A stretch of DNA of 46,205 bases, from the NCBI RefSeq assembly GCF_006345805.1, contig NW_021835029.1:1-46205 (forward strand). Reading direction: 5' to 3'. The notes beneath the pieces are model-generated. The model was not told where the DNA came from, ran no database searches, and worked only from the letters and a program-made list of their open reading frames with translations. Below, one piece after another: positions 33,144 through 37,357 of the stretch (position 1 is the first letter of the stretch; every line of letters begins with the position of its first letter). The stretch is from Octopus sinensis (Eukaryota). The position numbers were made by a program, and so were the translations under genes.

Positions 33144-36100
33144 ATTAATCATTTAGGGTAGCAAAAATTCAGTAAAAATTTATCGCTACCAGCGGCCTAG
33201 TGGAAAGAGAAAATAGTCAAAGACTAAATATGTATAAATATAACAATTTAGGAATGGCCTAAACAGGCCATTCGTCCACCAGAAAGAGCAGCCAGAACTC
33301 CAACCGCCAAGTAGTGTAATTCGGAAATAAGGTGAAAATTAAAAACATTTACCCTAATTCATCTTTTATACGATGCATCGTTTCAGTGTCTTTAATGATA
33401 GACCAGCTTAATTAAATTAATTAAGCTAGTCTACCATAGGTCACACTTCATCAGTAAAAGAAACCTGGGAGAGACGGACATACACGAGGCGACTGTATCA
33501 ATGCCTCGGAATGTCTGTCTTAAAATTTTCAAGACCAACGCATTCGCGCCAAACTTATCGGCAGCAAATATAAACTGCCGATTCCATCTCAGATTAGTCA
33601 GAAAATTATCAATTAATCAATTTAGGGTAGCAAAAAATTCAGTAAAAATTTATCGCTACCAGCGGCCTAGTGGAAAAGAGAAAATAGTCAAAGACTAAAT
33701 ATGTATAAATATAACAATTTAGGAATGGCCTAAACAGGCCATTCGTCCACCAGAAAGAGCAGCCAGAACTCCCAACCGCCAAGTAGTGTATTCGGAAATA
33801 AGGTGAAAATTTAAAAACATTTACCCTAATTCATCTTTTTATACGATGCATCGTTTCAGTGTCTTTAATGATAGACCAGCTTAATTAAATTAAATAAGCT
33901 AGTCTACCATAGGTCACACTTCATCAGTAAAAGAAACCTGGGAGAGAACGGACATACACGAGGCGACTGTATCAATGCCTCGGAATGTCTGTCTTAAAAT
34001 TTTCAAGACCAACGCATTCGCGCCAAACTTATCGGCAGCAAATATAAACTGCCGATCCATCTCAGAATTAGTCAGAAAATTATCAATTAATCAATTAGGG
34101 TAGCAAAAAATTCCAGTAAAAATTTATCGCTACCAGCGGCTAGTGGAAAGAGAAAATAGTCAAAGACTAAATATGTATAAATATAACAATTTAGGAATGG
34201 CCTAAACAGGCCATTCGTCCACCAGAAAGAGCACCAGAACTCCAACCGCCAAGTAGTGTAATTCGGAAATAAGGTGAAAATTTAAAAACATTTACCCTAA
34301 TTCATCTTTTATACGATGCATCGTTTCAGTGTCTTTAATGATAGACCAGCTTATTAAATTAAATTAAGCTAGTCTACCATAGGTCACACTTCATCAGTAA
34401 AAGAAACCTGGGAGAGACGGACATACACGAGGCGACTGTATCAATGCCTCGGGAATGTCTGTCTTAAAATTTTCAAGACCACGCATTCGCGCCAAACTTA
34501 TCGGCAGCAAATATAAACTGCCGATTCCATCTCAGAATTAGTCAGAAAATTATCAATTAATCATTTAGGGTAGCAAAAACTTCAGTAAAAATTTATCGCT
34601 ACCAGCGGCCAGTGGAAAGAGAAAATAGTCAAAGACTAAATATGTATAAATATAACAATTTAGGAATGGCCTAAACAGGCCATTCGTCACCAGAAAGAGC
34701 AGCCAGAACTCCAACCGCCAAGTAGTGTAATTCGAAATAAGGTGAAAATTTAAAAACATTACCCTAATCCTCTTTTATACGATGCATCGTTTCAGTGTCT
34801 TTAATGATAGACCAGCTTATTAAATTAAATTAAGCTAGTCTACCATAGGTCACACTTCATCAGTAAAAGAAACCTGGGAGAGACGGACATACACGAGGCG
34901 ACTGTATCAATGCCTCGGAATGTCTGTCTTAAAATTTTCAAGACCAACGCATTCGCGCCAAACTTATCGGCAGCAAATATAAACTGCCGATTCCATCTCA
35001 GAATTAGTCAGAAAATTATCAATTAATCAATTTAGGGTAGCAAAAAATTCAGTAAAAATTTATCGCTACCAGCGCCTAGTGGAAGAGAAAATAGTCAAAG
35101 ACTAAATATGTATAAATATAACAATTTAGGAATGGCCTAAACAGGCCATTCGTCCACCAGAAAGAGCAGCCAGAACTCCAACCGCCAAGTAGTGTAATTC
35201 GGAATAAGGTGAAAATTTAAAAACATTTACCCTAATTCATCTTTTATACGATCATCGTTCCAGTGTCTTTAATGATAGACCAGCTTAATTAAATTAAATT
35301 AAGCTAGTCTACCATAGGTCACACTTCATCAGTAAAAGAAACCTGGGAGAGACGGACATACACGAGGCGACTGTATCAATGCCTCGGGAATGTCTGTCTA
35401 AATTTTCAAGACCAACGCATTCGCGCCAACTTATCGGCAGCAAATATAAACTGCCGATTCCATCTCAGAATTAGTCAGAAAATTATCAATTAATCAATTT
35501 AGGGTAGCAAAAATTCAGTAAAAATTTATCGCTACCAGCGCGCCTAGTGGAAAAGAGAAAATAGTCAAAGACTAAATATGTATAAATAACAATTTAGGAA
35601 TGGCCTAAACAGGCCATTCGTCCACCAGAAGAGCAGCAGCCAGCAACTCCAACCGCCAAGTAGTGTAATTCGGAAATAAGGTGAAAATTTAAAAACATTT
35701 ACCCTAATTCATCTTTTATACGATGCATCGTTTCAGTGTCTTTAATGATAGACCAGCTTAATTAAATTAAATTAAGCTAGTCTACCATAGGTCACACTTC
35801 ATCAGTAAAAGAAACCTGGGAGAGACGGACATACACGAGGCGACTGTATCAATGCCTCGGGAATGTCTGTCTTAAAATTTTCAAGACCAACGCATTCGCG
35901 CCAACTTATCGGCAGCAAATATAAACTGCCGATTCCATCTCAGAATTAGTCAGAAAATTATCAATTAATCAATTTAGGGTAGCAAAAAATTCAGTAAAAT
36001 TTATCGCTACCAGCGGCCTAGTGGAAAAGAGAAATAGTCAAAGACTAAATATGTATAAATATAACAATTTAGGAATGGCCTAAACAGGCCATTCGTCCAC

Positions 36101-36467
36101 CAGAAAGAGCAGCCAGAACTCCACCGCCAAGTAGTGTAATTCGGAAATAAGGTGAAAATTTAAAAACATTTACCCTAATTCATCTTTTATACGATGCATC
36201 GTTTCAGTGTCTTTTATGATAGACCAGCTTAATTAAATTAAATTAAGCTAGTCTACCATAGGTCACACTTCATCAGTAAAAAAACCTGGGAGAGACGGAC
36301 ATACACGAGGCGACTGTATCAATGCCTCGGGAATGTCTGTCTTAAAATTTTCAAGACCAACGCATTCGCGCCAAACTTATCGGCAGCAAATATAAACTGC
36401 CGATTCCATCTCAGAATTAGTCAGAAAATTATCATTAATCAATTTAGGTAGCAAAAATTCAGTAAAA
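33144..36467 (-). mobile_element. Tandem array of seven ~470-bp hammerhead-containing monomers (retrozyme-like)
   Basis: tttagggtagc recurs at 33152, 33621, ~34094, 34564, 35031, 35498, 35973 and 36443 (period 467-475); one type I hammerhead per unit on the minus strand; no ORF. Confidence 0.9.
33362..33461 (-). ncRNA. Type I hammerhead ribozyme, copy 1 (others ~33835-33934, 34305-34404, 34771-34870, 35240-35339, 35712-35812, 36183-36283)
   Basis: Reverse complement reads tctttta-CTGATGA-agtgt[54-nt hairpin]acact-GAAA-cga(tgca)tcg-TA-taaaaga. Copy 5 has GAAA changed to GGAA. Confidence 0.9.
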
Positions 36468-36620
36468 AATTGATAATTTTCTGACTAATTCTGAGATGAA
36501 TCGGCAGTTTATATTTGCTGCCGATAAGTTGGCGCGAATGCGTTGGTCTTGAAAATTTTAAGACAGACATTCCCGAGGCATTGATACAGTCGCCTCGTGT
36601 ATGTCCGTCTCTCCCAGGTT

Positions 36621-36722
36621 TCTTTTACTGATGAAGTGTGACCTATGGTAGACTAGCTTAATTTAATTTAATTAAGCTGGTCTATCATTAAAGACACTGA
36701 AACGATGCCATCGTATAAAAGA
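36621..36722 (+). ncRNA. Type I hammerhead ribozyme
   Basis: tctttta 36621-27, CTGATGA 36628-34, stem II agtgt/acact, GAAA 36699-702, stem III with one extra C, GTA triplet, taaaaga 36716-22. Confidence 0.88.
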
Positions 36723-37097
36723 TGAATTAGGGTAAATGTTTTTAAATTTTCACCTTATTTCCGATTACACTACTTGGCGGTTGGAGTTCTGGCTGCTCTT
36801 TCTGGTGGACGAATGGCCTGTTTAGGCCATTCCTAAATTGTTATATTTATACATATTTAGTCTTTGACTATTTTCTCTTTTCCACTAGGCCGCTGGTAGC
36901 GATAAATTTTTACTGAATTTTTTGCTACCCTAAATTGATTAATTGATAATTTTCTGACTAATTCTGAGATGGAATCGGCAGTTTATATTGCTGCCGACGA
37001 TAAGTTTGGCGCGAATGCGTTGGTCTTGAAAATTTTAAGACAGACATTCCCGAGGCATTGATACAGTCCGCTCGTGTATGTCCGTCTCTCCCAGGTT

Positions 37098-37197
37098 TCT
37101 TTTACTGATGAAGTGTGACCTATGGTAGACTAGCTTATTTAATTTAATTAAGCTGGTCTATCATTAAAGACACTGAAACGATGCATCGTATAAAAGA
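37098..37197 (+). ncRNA. Type I hammerhead ribozyme (intact consensus)
   Basis: tctttta-CTGATGA(37105-11)-agtgt...acact-GAAA(37175-78)-cgatgcatcg-TA-taaaaga; predicted cleavage after 37190. Confidence 0.92.
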
Positions 37198-37318
37198 TGA
37201 ATTAGGGTAAATGTTTTTAAATTTTCACCTTATTTCCGAATTACACTACTTGGCGGTTGGAGTTCTGGCTGCTCTTTCTGGTGGACGAATGGCCTGTTTA
37301 GGCCATTCCTAAATTGTT

Positions 37319-37357
<39 letters not shown>

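What the first reader, a model, noticed from the sequence alone, without database searches (positions are those of the whole stretch)
33144..37322. 4.2-kb array of a ~470-bp monomer, each copy encoding a type I hammerhead ribozyme: candidate cephalopod non-LTR retrozyme
Seen: nine copies of tctttta-CUGAUGA-agugu[long hairpin]acacu-GAAA-cga(ugca)ucg-UA-uaaaaga in a non-coding monomer tandemly repeated at 467-475 bp. Stem I is a perfect 7 bp and can extend (ccc a ggtt / aatt a ggg) across a small bulge. Stem III is short and palindromic. Established: tandem small monomers with one type I hammerhead each are the architecture of metazoan non-LTR retrozymes and ribozyme satellites (newt satellite 2, schistosome SM-alpha, cricket and coral/mussel/axolotl families). 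These are transcribed, self-cleave to monomers and circularise, and their palindromic stem III supports dimeric cleavage as in Penelope-like elements. Inference: this is such an element, with a large monomer. I do not recall a described octopus retrozyme, but that needs a literature check. Neither array end coincides with the cleavage site (the left end is ~225 nt away), as expected if cDNA was primed on a circular or multimeric template.
Basis: partly seen in the sequence, partly recalled or inferred. Interest (0 to 1): 0.93.

Follow-up and report, generated by a model that had tools for sequence, protein, structure and literature searches.

The report
Hammerhead-ribozyme repeat, two inverted arms
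A 474-bp non-coding repeat, each copy carrying a complete hammerhead self-cleaving RNA motif, sits as two head-to-head arrays inside a (TA)n microsatellite; it looks like a new member of the known animal "retrozyme" mobile elements, probably copied in by a Penelope-like retrotransposon.

Summary
The repeat and the motif are real. A 474-bp, 37% GC, non-coding monomer occurs about 8.9 times, and nine copies carry a type I hammerhead core (eight intact).

It is not one tandem array. About 7.1 copies lie on the minus strand (33144-36471). About 1.8 copies lie inverted on the plus strand (36468-37322). The two arms join head to head, and both outer ends run into (TA)n.

The hammerhead three-way junction is within 1 kcal/mol of the minimum free energy. 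Helix III is a perfect 12-nt palindrome, and a double-hammerhead dimer is predicted. The whole monomer is strongly structured (z = -8.5). A chance match inside one given monomer is very unlikely (4e-7 to 1e-5).

Two points count against it. No Rfam hammerhead model scores it at all. The 10.1-11.1 pair is A-U instead of the conserved G-C.

A partial tandem, an adjacent inverted 5'-truncated copy and a (TA)n target together match the published hallmarks of Penelope-like element insertions.

Best reading: a non-LTR retrozyme, new for an octopus-like host, inserted by Penelope-like machinery. Cleavage, circular RNA and other genomic copies could not be tested. This is a new member of a known kind, of moderate interest.

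The parts
32976..33143 (.). Left flank: compound microsatellite, (ATCT)n then about 80 bp of (TA)n, abutting the array.
   Evidence: TRF rows 32976-33090 (ATCT) and 32992-33145 (TATA); sequence.
33144..36471 (-). Left arm. About 7.08 monomers with hammerhead sense on the minus strand. It runs from consensus position 189 (at 36471) through six full monomers to position 228 (at 33144).
   Evidence: TRF 33144-36468, period 471, 7.1 copies. blastn of the 474-nt consensus against the window. Monomer cuts.
36435..36470 (.). Head-to-head junction. A 36-nt segment belongs to the left arm only (consensus ~189-225) and forms the loop between the two inverted arms. About 4 nt (36468-36471, A/T) are shared by both arms.
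   Evidence: Spurious miRNA-model hits show 25-bp arms at 36410-36434 / 36471-36495 with a 36-nt loop. blastn ends overlap at 36468-36471. Sequence comparison.
36468..37322 (+). Right arm. About 1.80 monomers, inverted relative to the left arm and 5'-truncated. It runs from consensus position 226 through one full monomer to about position 132.
   Evidence: blastn. Inverted-repeat pairs at 97-100% complementarity. Two plus-strand motifs.
37323..37357 (.). Right flank: (TA)n microsatellite abutting the array.
   Evidence: TRF 37318-37357, (TA)20; sequence.
37098..37197 (+). Representative hammerhead motif. Helix I 5' strand at 37098-37104, CUGAUGA at 37105-37111. Helix II is 5 bp, a 5x5 internal loop, 19 bp and a 6-nt loop. 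Then GAAA, then helix III (A-U plus 3 bp plus a UGCA loop). Predicted cleavage is after A at 37190. Helix I 3' strand at 37191-37197, extendable over 37090-37207.
   Evidence: This fold is also part of the whole-monomer minimum-free-energy structure.
36621..36722 (+). Hammerhead motif. The core is intact, with one extra C in the helix III loop. Predicted cleavage after 36715.
36183..36283 (-). Hammerhead motif with intact core. Helix I has a G-U pair in place of G-C, caused by a 1-nt deletion. Predicted cleavage after 36190 (minus strand).
35712..35812 (-). Hammerhead motif identical to the consensus. Predicted cleavage after 35719 (minus strand).
35240..35339 (-). Defective hammerhead copy: GGAA in place of GAAA (A13 to G) and a 1-nt deletion in helix III.
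   Evidence: It fails the descriptor.
34771..34870 (-). Hammerhead motif with intact core. Predicted cleavage after 34778 (minus strand).
34305..34404 (-). Hammerhead motif with intact core. Predicted cleavage after 34312 (minus strand).
33835..33934 (-). Hammerhead motif with intact core. An extra A in the helix I 3' strand leaves 5 contiguous bp. Predicted cleavage after 33842 (minus strand).
33362..33461 (-). Hammerhead motif with intact core. Predicted cleavage after 33369 (minus strand).

Best explanation
The locus is one insertion of a non-autonomous, non-coding retroelement of the non-LTR retrozyme kind.

Shown from the sequence:
- The 474-nt unit encodes a type I hammerhead.
- Helix I is formed by the two ends of the unit.
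- Helix III is a 12-nt palindrome.

Inferred life cycle:
- Multimeric transcripts fold into double hammerheads, with two adjacent units pairing their helix III palindromes.
- They cleave after GUA into 474-nt monomers. Helix I (7 bp plus an extension) holds the monomer ends together.
- A host RNA ligase closes the monomers into highly structured circular RNA.

Inferred from the locus architecture:
- A Penelope-like element (PLE) reverse transcriptase/GIY-YIG endonuclease cut a (TA)n microsatellite.
- Both exposed DNA ends primed reverse transcription at U/A-rich single-stranded sites of the circular or multimeric RNA.
- This produced two multimeric cDNAs of 7.1 and 1.8 units growing towards each other.
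- They were joined head to head through a 4-nt microhomology.

This model explains four things: the tandem copies, the ends that ignore the cleavage site, the inverted 5'-truncated arm, and the (TA)n on both sides.
For: Motif:
- All invariant core positions are present: C3 U4 G5 A6 U7 G8 A9, G12 A13 A14, A15.1-U16.1, and H17 = A. The order of parts gives type I topology.
- The three-helix fold is -39.7 kcal/mol against a minimum free energy of -40.7. It is also part of the minimum-free-energy fold of the whole monomer.

Dimer:
- ACGAUGCAUCGU is a perfect palindrome. Cofolding gives -96.1 kcal/mol against 2 x -40.7.
- In a tandem dimer transcript the two helix III segments pair with each other.

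Monomer properties:
- GC is 36.9% and 64% of bases are paired.
- The folding z-score is -8.5, with 0 of 100 shuffles folding as well.
- There is no ORF of 110 aa or more, and the longest open frame is 62 aa. No tRNA was found.

Chance:
- 0 descriptor hits in the rest of the window and 0 in 20 Mb of random sequence.
- The rate per given monomer is 4e-7 to 1e-5.

Young single event:
- There are only 8 substitutions in about 4.2 kb; the other 62 differences are 1-nt indels.

Insertion architecture:
- Two head-to-head arms with both sense 3' ends on (TA)n.

Definitions and model:
- The definition and mobilisation model of non-LTR retrozymes come from PMC7229834.
- A PLE origin of animal retrozymes is argued in bioRxiv 10.64898/2026.07.22.740005.
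Against: - No Rfam hammerhead covariance model gives any score, even on 131 nt at E<=10.
- The 10.1-11.1 pair is A-U. G10.1-C11.1 is described as the most conserved pair after 15.1-16.1 (PMC3088659; PMC4209133).
- Helix II has a 5x5 internal loop and a 19-bp extension where canonical metazoan type I motifs have a 4-bp helix and a terminal loop. The usual loop 1-loop 2 tertiary contact therefore cannot be recognised.
- Covariation cannot be assessed, because all copies are near-identical and no relative was found elsewhere.
- Only one locus is visible, and there is no PLE ORF in the window.
- About 2 motifs of this strength are expected by chance somewhere in a 2.8-Gb genome.
Confidence: 0.6

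Rival explanations
1. It is an ordinary local satellite. The monomer happens to contain a hammerhead-like string, or a decayed relic of one. The array grew by unequal crossing-over or replication slippage, and the inverted part arose by a fold-back replication error. No RNA-mediated step is involved.
For: - Only one locus is seen.
- Rfam models do not recognise the motif.
- The 10.1-11.1 pair is A-U.
- A fold-back with a short spacer (36 nt) is a common DNA-level rearrangement.
- A few chance motifs per genome are expected.
Against: - The chance of such a motif falling inside one given 474-bp monomer is 4e-7 to 1e-5.
- Features outside the descriptor fit the retrozyme pattern: a 12-nt palindromic helix III, an extended helix I closing the unit, and a z-score of -8.5.
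- A fold-back does not explain why both outer ends sit in (TA)n at U/A-rich points of the unit.
Confidence: 0.15
2. It is not an independent non-autonomous family. It is a multimerised pseudo-LTR or terminal region of an autonomous Penelope-like element, inserted without its reading frame because of extreme 5' truncation and tandem copying.
For: - PLE insertions are heavily 5'-truncated, tandem and inverted, and they carry hammerheads in their pseudo-LTRs (PMC8557442; PMC4209133).
- Xenopus retrozymes are homologous to PLE pseudo-LTRs.
- Octopus genomes hold Penelope families (PMC13282606).
Against: - There is no RT or GIY-YIG coding sequence in or next to the array.
- Nearly nine clean unit-length repeats are more than the usual one-and-a-bit partial tandem.
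- Metazoan PLE hammerheads are described as minimal motifs with almost no helix III and G10.1-C11.1. This one has a 4-bp helix III and a long helix II.
Confidence: 0.13
3. The inverted junction, the copy number, or both are assembly artefacts of long-read sequencing of a simple direct array.
For: The differences between copies are 89% single-base indels, concentrated in homopolymer runs and biased towards deletions. That is the error profile of poorly polished long-read consensus in repeats.
Against: - The right arm is only 1.8 units long and continues into a different unique flank. It is not a mirror image of the left arm and its flank.
- The spacer is genuine monomer sequence rather than adapter.
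- Even if this were an artefact, the monomer and the ribozyme motif would be unaffected.
Confidence: 0.07

Closest known systems
Metazoan non-LTR retrozymes (Cervera and de la Pena 2020, PMC7229834): coral 220-240 bp, mussel 350-390 bp, axolotl 330/350 bp units
   Same: - A type I hammerhead occurs once per unit.
[quoted passage not shown]
- There is no ORF, LTR, PBS or PPT.
- The monomer RNA is highly self-paired.
- Helix III is short and palindromic, favouring dimeric cleavage.
- Array ends are unrelated to the cleavage site.
   Different: - Helix II is 5 bp, an internal loop and then a 19-bp extension, instead of 4 bp plus a terminal loop.
- The 10.1-11.1 pair is A-U.
- The unit is 474 bp. 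That is longer than the three characterised examples but inside the 51-972 bp range of the 2026 survey.
- The host group appears undescribed for such elements.
- RNA circles and cleavage have not been shown here.
Penelope-like element insertions (Craig et al. 2021, PMC8557442; Cervera and de la Pena 2014, PMC4209133)
   Same: - The insertion is a partial tandem.
- An inverted 5'-truncated copy lies directly at the 5' end.
- The insertion sits in a (TA)n microsatellite, so no target duplication can be read.
- A hammerhead with a palindromic helix III is present.
   Different: - There is no RT/GIY-YIG reading frame.
- The unit is 474 bp rather than 3-4 kb.
- The hammerhead is not the minimal PLE type.
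Ribozyme satellites: newt satellite 2 (~330 bp), Schistosoma Sm-alpha, Dolichopoda cricket pDo500 (~500 bp; PMC2837043)
   Same: - Each tandem unit holds one type I hammerhead.
- Double-hammerhead cleavage has been proposed for them.
- pDo500 has a similar unit size, and compensatory changes at 10.1-11.1 are seen there.
   Different: - Those are very abundant satellites. pDo500 makes up about 5% of a genome.
- Here a single 4.2-kb locus with an insertion signature is seen.

Membership tests
Non-LTR retrozyme | Type I hammerhead with a complete catalytic core in each unit | tested here: met
   The core and topology were read directly and pass a descriptor in 8 of 9 copies. The ninth copy is mutated.
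Non-LTR retrozyme | Short tandem repeats (150-450 bp in PMC7229834; 51-972 bp in the 2026 survey), from dimers to multimers | tested here: met
   A 474-bp unit in 7.1 + 1.8 copies.
Non-LTR retrozyme | Low GC (<45-50%) | tested here: met
   36.9%.
Non-LTR retrozyme | Non-coding, with no LTR, PBS or PPT | tested here: met
   No ORF of 110 aa or more; the longest open frame is 62 aa. No tRNA-like part. The array is a plain repeat with no terminal repeats. PBS and PPT were not searched for as such.
Non-LTR retrozyme | Monomer RNA highly self-paired | tested here: met
   z = -8.5 and -153.7 kcal/mol. 64% of bases are paired when folded as a circle.
Non-LTR retrozyme | Self-cleavage of transcripts | not testable with these tools
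   Only thermodynamic prediction is available.
Non-LTR retrozyme | Accumulation as circular RNA | not testable with these tools
   No transcriptome data are available.
Non-LTR retrozyme | Dispersed copies at many loci of the genome | not testable with these tools
   No host genome is on hand. There is no second copy in the window. Nothing related was found in metagenome, viral or prokaryote contigs, or among called proteins.
Non-LTR retrozyme | Co-occurrence with Penelope-like elements in the same genome | tested here: inconclusive
   Octopus vulgaris has Penelope families (PMC13282606). The host of this window is only inferred to be octopus-like, and no PLE is in the window.
Rfam hammerhead families (Hammerhead_1, Hammerhead_3, HH9, HH10, type II) | Covariance-model score at or above the gathering threshold | tested here: not met
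   No hit at gathering threshold, at E<=10 on 4.6 kb, or at E<=10 on 131 nt.
Canonical metazoan type I hammerhead (as defined in PMC4209133) | Helix III short and capped by a small palindromic loop | tested here: met
   A-U plus 3 bp plus a UGCA loop. The whole 12 nt are palindromic.
Canonical metazoan type I hammerhead (as defined in PMC4209133) | G10.1-C11.1 pair | tested here: not met
   A10.1-U11.1 in all nine copies.
Canonical metazoan type I hammerhead (as defined in PMC4209133) | Helix I about 6 bp and helix II about 4 bp, with conserved loop 1-loop 2 contacts | tested here: inconclusive
   Helix I is 7 bp up to a 2-nt bulge. Helix II is 5 bp up to a 5x5 internal loop and then 19 bp. 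The spacing is similar, but there is no terminal loop 2 and no recognisable conserved loop nucleotides.
Penelope-like element insertion architecture | Partial tandem plus an inverted 5'-truncated copy at the 5' end | tested here: met
   against the description in PMC8557442.
Penelope-like element insertion architecture | Microsatellite target, (TA)n | tested here: met
   (TA)n lies on both sides.
Penelope-like element insertion architecture | RT plus GIY-YIG reading frame | tested here: not met
   None in the array or the window. The element would therefore be non-autonomous.

The most novel reading that the evidence does not exclude
The locus preserves the footprint of how animal retrozymes integrate. 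Both ends of a PLE-type break in (TA)n primed rolling-circle reverse transcription on the RNA. The two priming points are not random: each lies 6 A/T-only nt after one of the only two CCUAAAUUG motifs of the unit. One of those points (position ~226-228) is also where the other cDNA stops. If this holds at other insertions, it would be the first sequence-level priming signal for non-LTR retrozymes. The field has said such a signal is missing (PMC7761336). In addition, any read-through transcript of the head-to-head arms would fold into about 0.85 kb of double-stranded RNA, a ready source of small RNAs against the family.
Probability: 0.2. Interest if true: 0.7.

Novelty: new member of a known kind. 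Interest (0 to 1): 0.45.

Why it matters
Retrozymes are an abundant source of small circular RNAs in animals, yet how they are copied back into DNA is still inferred indirectly.

The papers I could search describe no hammerhead repeat or retrozyme in cephalopods. A cephalopod family would therefore extend the known host range.

This hammerhead escapes all Rfam models. That shows covariance-model scans under-count such ribozymes when helix II is long.

The most useful aspect is the locus architecture. A young, almost undiverged insertion with an inverted truncated arm inside (TA)n is direct structural support for mobilisation by Penelope-like elements.

Tried and rejected
- **Rfam:** three searches gave no hammerhead or other ribozyme on either strand. 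The miRNA-model hits at 36396-36508 are artefacts of the inverted junction, and all score far below gathering threshold.
- **Metagenome contigs:** scanned with CTGATGAAGTGT-N(45-75)-ACACTGAAAC. The two hits (L001, L002) lack helices I and III and are chance matches.
- **Viral contigs and GTDB genome contigs:** exact-string scans found nothing.
- **Protein collection:** searched with a concatenate of all open frames of the unit, hoping to reach other copies through called ORFs. Nothing was found.
- **tRNA scan:** none.
- **Pfam on ten nearby ORFs:** only a Tc1 transposase HTH fragment.
- **Covariation analysis:** abandoned, because the copies differ almost only by 1-nt indels.
- **Simple inversion of a once-direct array:** rejected. 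Undoing the inversion leaves a ~57-61-nt gap (189 versus 132).
- **Missed-adapter palindromic read:** rejected as the source of the junction. The arms are unequal and the flanks differ.
- **Deltavirus-like or viroid-like integrated replicon:** rejected. There is no ORF, only one polarity carries a ribozyme, and it is a DNA tandem array.
- **Failed script and missing paper:** One paper on core base-pair tolerance was not held.
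Full report
**Observation**

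TRF finds a 471-bp period from 33144 to 36468, with 7.1 copies, 96% matches and 2% indels. The string CTGATGAAGTGT occurs nine times between 33443 and 37116. Seven occurrences are on the minus strand and two on the plus strand.

Cutting at the predicted cleavage sites gives full units of 466-475 nt. A 474-nt consensus was built from these.

So the motif, the copy count and the period are real. The single 4.2-kb tandem array is not.

**Architecture**

blastn of the consensus against the window shows two arms.

- **Left arm.** Its sense strand is the minus strand. It runs from consensus position 189 (window 36471) through six full units to position 228 (window 33144), about 7.08 units.
- **Right arm.** It lies on the plus strand and runs from position 226 (window 36468) through one full unit to about position 132 (window ~37322), about 1.80 units.

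The arms meet 5' end to 5' end and overlap by about 4 A/T bases. The 36 nt at 36435-36470 belong to the left arm only. They form the loop of a giant hairpin, which produces spurious sub-threshold miRNA-model hits. The inverted-repeat finder confirms 97-100% complementary arms.

Both outer ends, which are the sense 3' ends, run straight into (TA)n. On the left this is about 80 bp of (TA)n following (ATCT)n. On the right it is (TA)20. No other copy of the unit exists in the window.

**The ribozyme motif**

Reading the sense strand, the order of parts is:

1. helix I 5' strand;
2. C3 U4 G5 A6 U7 G8 A9;
3. helix II hairpin;
4. G12 A13 A14;
5. A15.1, helix III hairpin, U16.1;
6. A17 (the cleavage site follows);
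7. helix I 3' strand.

This is type I topology with every invariant core base present.

- **Fold energy.** ViennaRNA gives -39.7 kcal/mol for the three-helix fold, against a minimum of -40.7. The minimum differs only in replacing helix III with a pairing of UGAUG to CAUCG.
- **Whole unit.** When the full 474-nt unit is folded, all three helices are part of the minimum-free-energy structure. That structure is far more stable than shuffles: -153.7 against -104.9 +/- 5.8 kcal/mol, z = -8.5. As a circle, 64% of bases are paired.
- **Helix I.** 7 bp, a 2-nt bulge, 4 bp, a 1x1 mismatch and 3 bp. It clamps the two ends of the unit together.
- **Helix II.** 5 bp, a 5x5 internal loop, 19 bp and a 6-nt loop.
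- **Helix III.** A-U plus 3 bp with a UGCA loop. The 12 nt ACGAUGCAUCGU are a perfect palindrome.
- **Dimer.** Cofolding two motifs gives -96.1 kcal/mol against 2 x -40.7, with a 12-bp intermolecular helix III. In a tandem dimer transcript the two palindromes pair with each other.

A double hammerhead of this kind is what has been described for newt, viroid, PLE and retrozyme motifs (PMC6155905; PMC4209133).

**Chance**

- A simple descriptor required CUGANGA, GAAA, A15.1-U16.1, H17, and helices of at least 5, 4 and 3 bp. It recovers 8 of the 9 copies. It finds nothing in the other 42 kb on either strand, even when relaxed, and nothing in 20 Mb of first-order Markov sequence.
- Factorised estimates give 4e-10 per nt for a match as strong as observed and 1.4e-8 per nt for the default descriptor. 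That means about 2 and about 78 chance matches in a 2.8-Gb genome, but only 4e-7 to 1e-5 for any one 474-bp unit.
- The motif alone is therefore not proof. The same caveat is made in PMC3088659. A motif inside a tandem unit, together with the features outside the descriptor, is very unlikely to be accidental.
- The nine copies are one observation amplified, not nine.

**Evidence against**

- No Rfam hammerhead family gives any hit: not at gathering threshold, not at E<=10 on 4.6 kb, and not at E<=10 on 131 nt centred on one motif. The likely reasons are the 54-nt content of helix II and the non-consensus stems.
- The 10.1-11.1 pair is A-U in all copies. G10.1-C11.1 is called highly conserved and the most conserved pair after 15.1-16.1. 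Natural changes at these positions do exist in the cricket satellite.
- Canonical loop 1-loop 2 contacts cannot be recognised. The internal loop 5 bp into helix II and the bulge 7 bp into helix I are at plausible distances, but that is inference only.
- One copy (35257-35332) has A13 changed to G.

**Copy differences**

Against the consensus there are 70 differences in about 4.2 kb:

| Type | Count | Note |
|---|---|---|
| Substitutions | 8 | |
| Deletions | 46 | 39 lie in homopolymer runs of 2 or more, although such runs cover only 52% of positions |
| Insertions | 16 | 9 repeat a neighbouring base |

All seven differences shared by more than one copy are single-base homopolymer-length changes. 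This is the profile of long-read consensus error in a repeat, or of polymerase slippage. Either way, substitution divergence is about 0.2%, so the copies share a very recent origin. Covariation cannot be assessed.

**Context and host**

The window is AT-rich and full of microsatellites. It holds two transposon fragments:

- a Tc1 transposase HTH at 30010-30390 on the minus strand (Pfam PF01498);
- a non-LTR RT C-terminal piece at 6701-7411 on the plus strand.

Their best named relatives are Octopus sinensis proteins at 68% and 76% identity. A mantis shrimp protein is at 67% for the first. An octopus-like host is therefore plausible but not shown. No RT, GIY-YIG or other long ORF lies in or near the array.

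**What it is and how it most likely works**

All testable criteria of the non-LTR retrozymes defined by Cervera and de la Pena are met (PMC7229834):

- a type I hammerhead;
- a tandem unit of a few hundred bp;
- GC below 45%;
- no LTR, PBS, PPT or ORF;
- a highly paired monomer.

Their model has target-primed reverse transcription on a circular RNA yielding tandem cDNA. It predicts arrays whose ends ignore the cleavage site, as seen here.

[quoted passage not shown] They also show a bias for microsatellites, (TA)n in the Naiad clade, that hides target duplications (PMC8557442). This locus shows all three features.

I therefore infer one insertion event in four steps:

1. A PLE-type break occurred in (TA)n.
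2. Both DNA ends primed on U/A-rich stretches of the retrozyme RNA.
3. Two cDNA multimers grew inward.
4. They joined by microhomology.

Shown: the sequence, the fold predictions, the arm geometry and the flanks. Inferred: transcription, cleavage, circularisation, the identity of the enzyme, and the double priming.

**A detail I cannot explain away**

The 9-mer CCTAAATTG occurs exactly twice in the unit, at 118-126 and 214-222. The two arms end at positions 132 and 228. Each end is thus 6 A/T-only bases after one copy of the motif, right before (TA)n.

The right arm also starts at position 226, essentially where the left arm ends. That is the contiguity expected if one cDNA stopped where the other was primed.

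If ends are simply set by microhomology with (TA)n, only about four U/A-rich stretches qualify, and the coincidence is weak (roughly 0.1-0.2). If ends are otherwise free, it is about 0.2-0.6%. It needs other insertions to test.

**Comparison and novelty**

Tandem units with type I hammerheads have been known since 1987. The retrozyme concept for animals dates from 2020, and mussels are a characterised mollusc example.

Unit sizes of 51-972 bp are reported, and most families have at most seven units per array. The unit is therefore not exceptional in size.

The papers I could search mention no hammerhead, ribozyme or retrozyme in cephalopods. A 2026 octopus repeat annotation lists Penelope elements but nothing of this kind.

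Reviews state that retrozyme repeats show no motif pointing to their mobilising element. A 2026 preprint argues for PLE ancestry from sequence similarity in Xenopus.

This is a new member of a known kind, with an atypical helix II and 10.1-11.1 pair, and with a locus structure that independently supports the PLE link.

**Verdict**

| Question | Result |
|---|---|
| Observation | partly confirmed |
| Best explanation | confidence about 0.6 |

The class is established. The decisive properties (cleavage, circles, spread) remain untested.

Noticed in passing
window 33144 and ~37322 (consensus positions 228 and 132): Both outer ends of the two arms lie exactly 6 A/T-only bases after the only two copies of CCTAAATTG in the 474-nt unit, and then run into (TA)n. 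The right arm's inner start (position 226) nearly coincides with the left arm's outer end (position 228).
   Followed up: partly
window 33144-37322: Differences between copies are 89% single-base indels, biased towards deletions and enriched in homopolymer runs. Only 8 substitutions occur in about 4.2 kb. This is probably unpolished long-read consensus error in the repeat, or else polymerase slippage.
   Followed up: partly
window 36396-36508: The head-to-head junction folds into a long hairpin with a 36-nt loop. It draws sub-threshold hits from several miRNA covariance models (44 bits or less, against gathering scores of 83-100 bits for the four best-scoring models). These are artefacts of the inverted repeat, not miRNA genes.
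   Followed up: yes
window 18084-18484: A 184-bp unit is repeated 2.2 times (93% matches, no indels). Its sequence looks SINE-like (…GGAATTTGAACTCAGAACG…, …GTCGACCCCAGTGCGAAACTGGTAC…). ARAGORN calls no tRNA there.
   Followed up: no
window 30010-30390 (-): Fragment of a Tc1/mariner transposase N-terminus (Pfam HTH_Tnp_Tc3_2, E = 3e-13). Named relatives are in Octopus sinensis (68%) and the mantis shrimp Oratosquilla oratoria (67%).
   Followed up: partly
window 6701-7411 (+): The C-terminal part of this ORF resembles a non-LTR retrotransposon reverse transcriptase. Its only strong relative is Octopus sinensis LOC115227543 (76% identity over 72% of the query, PF00078).
   Followed up: partly
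whole window, e.g. 386-836, 5373-5729, 15432-15672, 20822-21226, 26981-27862, 42014-42524: Microsatellite density is extremely high (more than 157 TRF rows in 46 kb). It includes several arrays of 200-500 bp of AT, TG/AC, TGA, GGT/TGG and ATCT/AGAT.
   Followed up: no
window 838-1128: Minisatellite of 19-20-bp units (GAGGGGTGAAAAGCCCGAC and a related unit on the other strand), about 10 copies at 69-79% matches.
   Followed up: no
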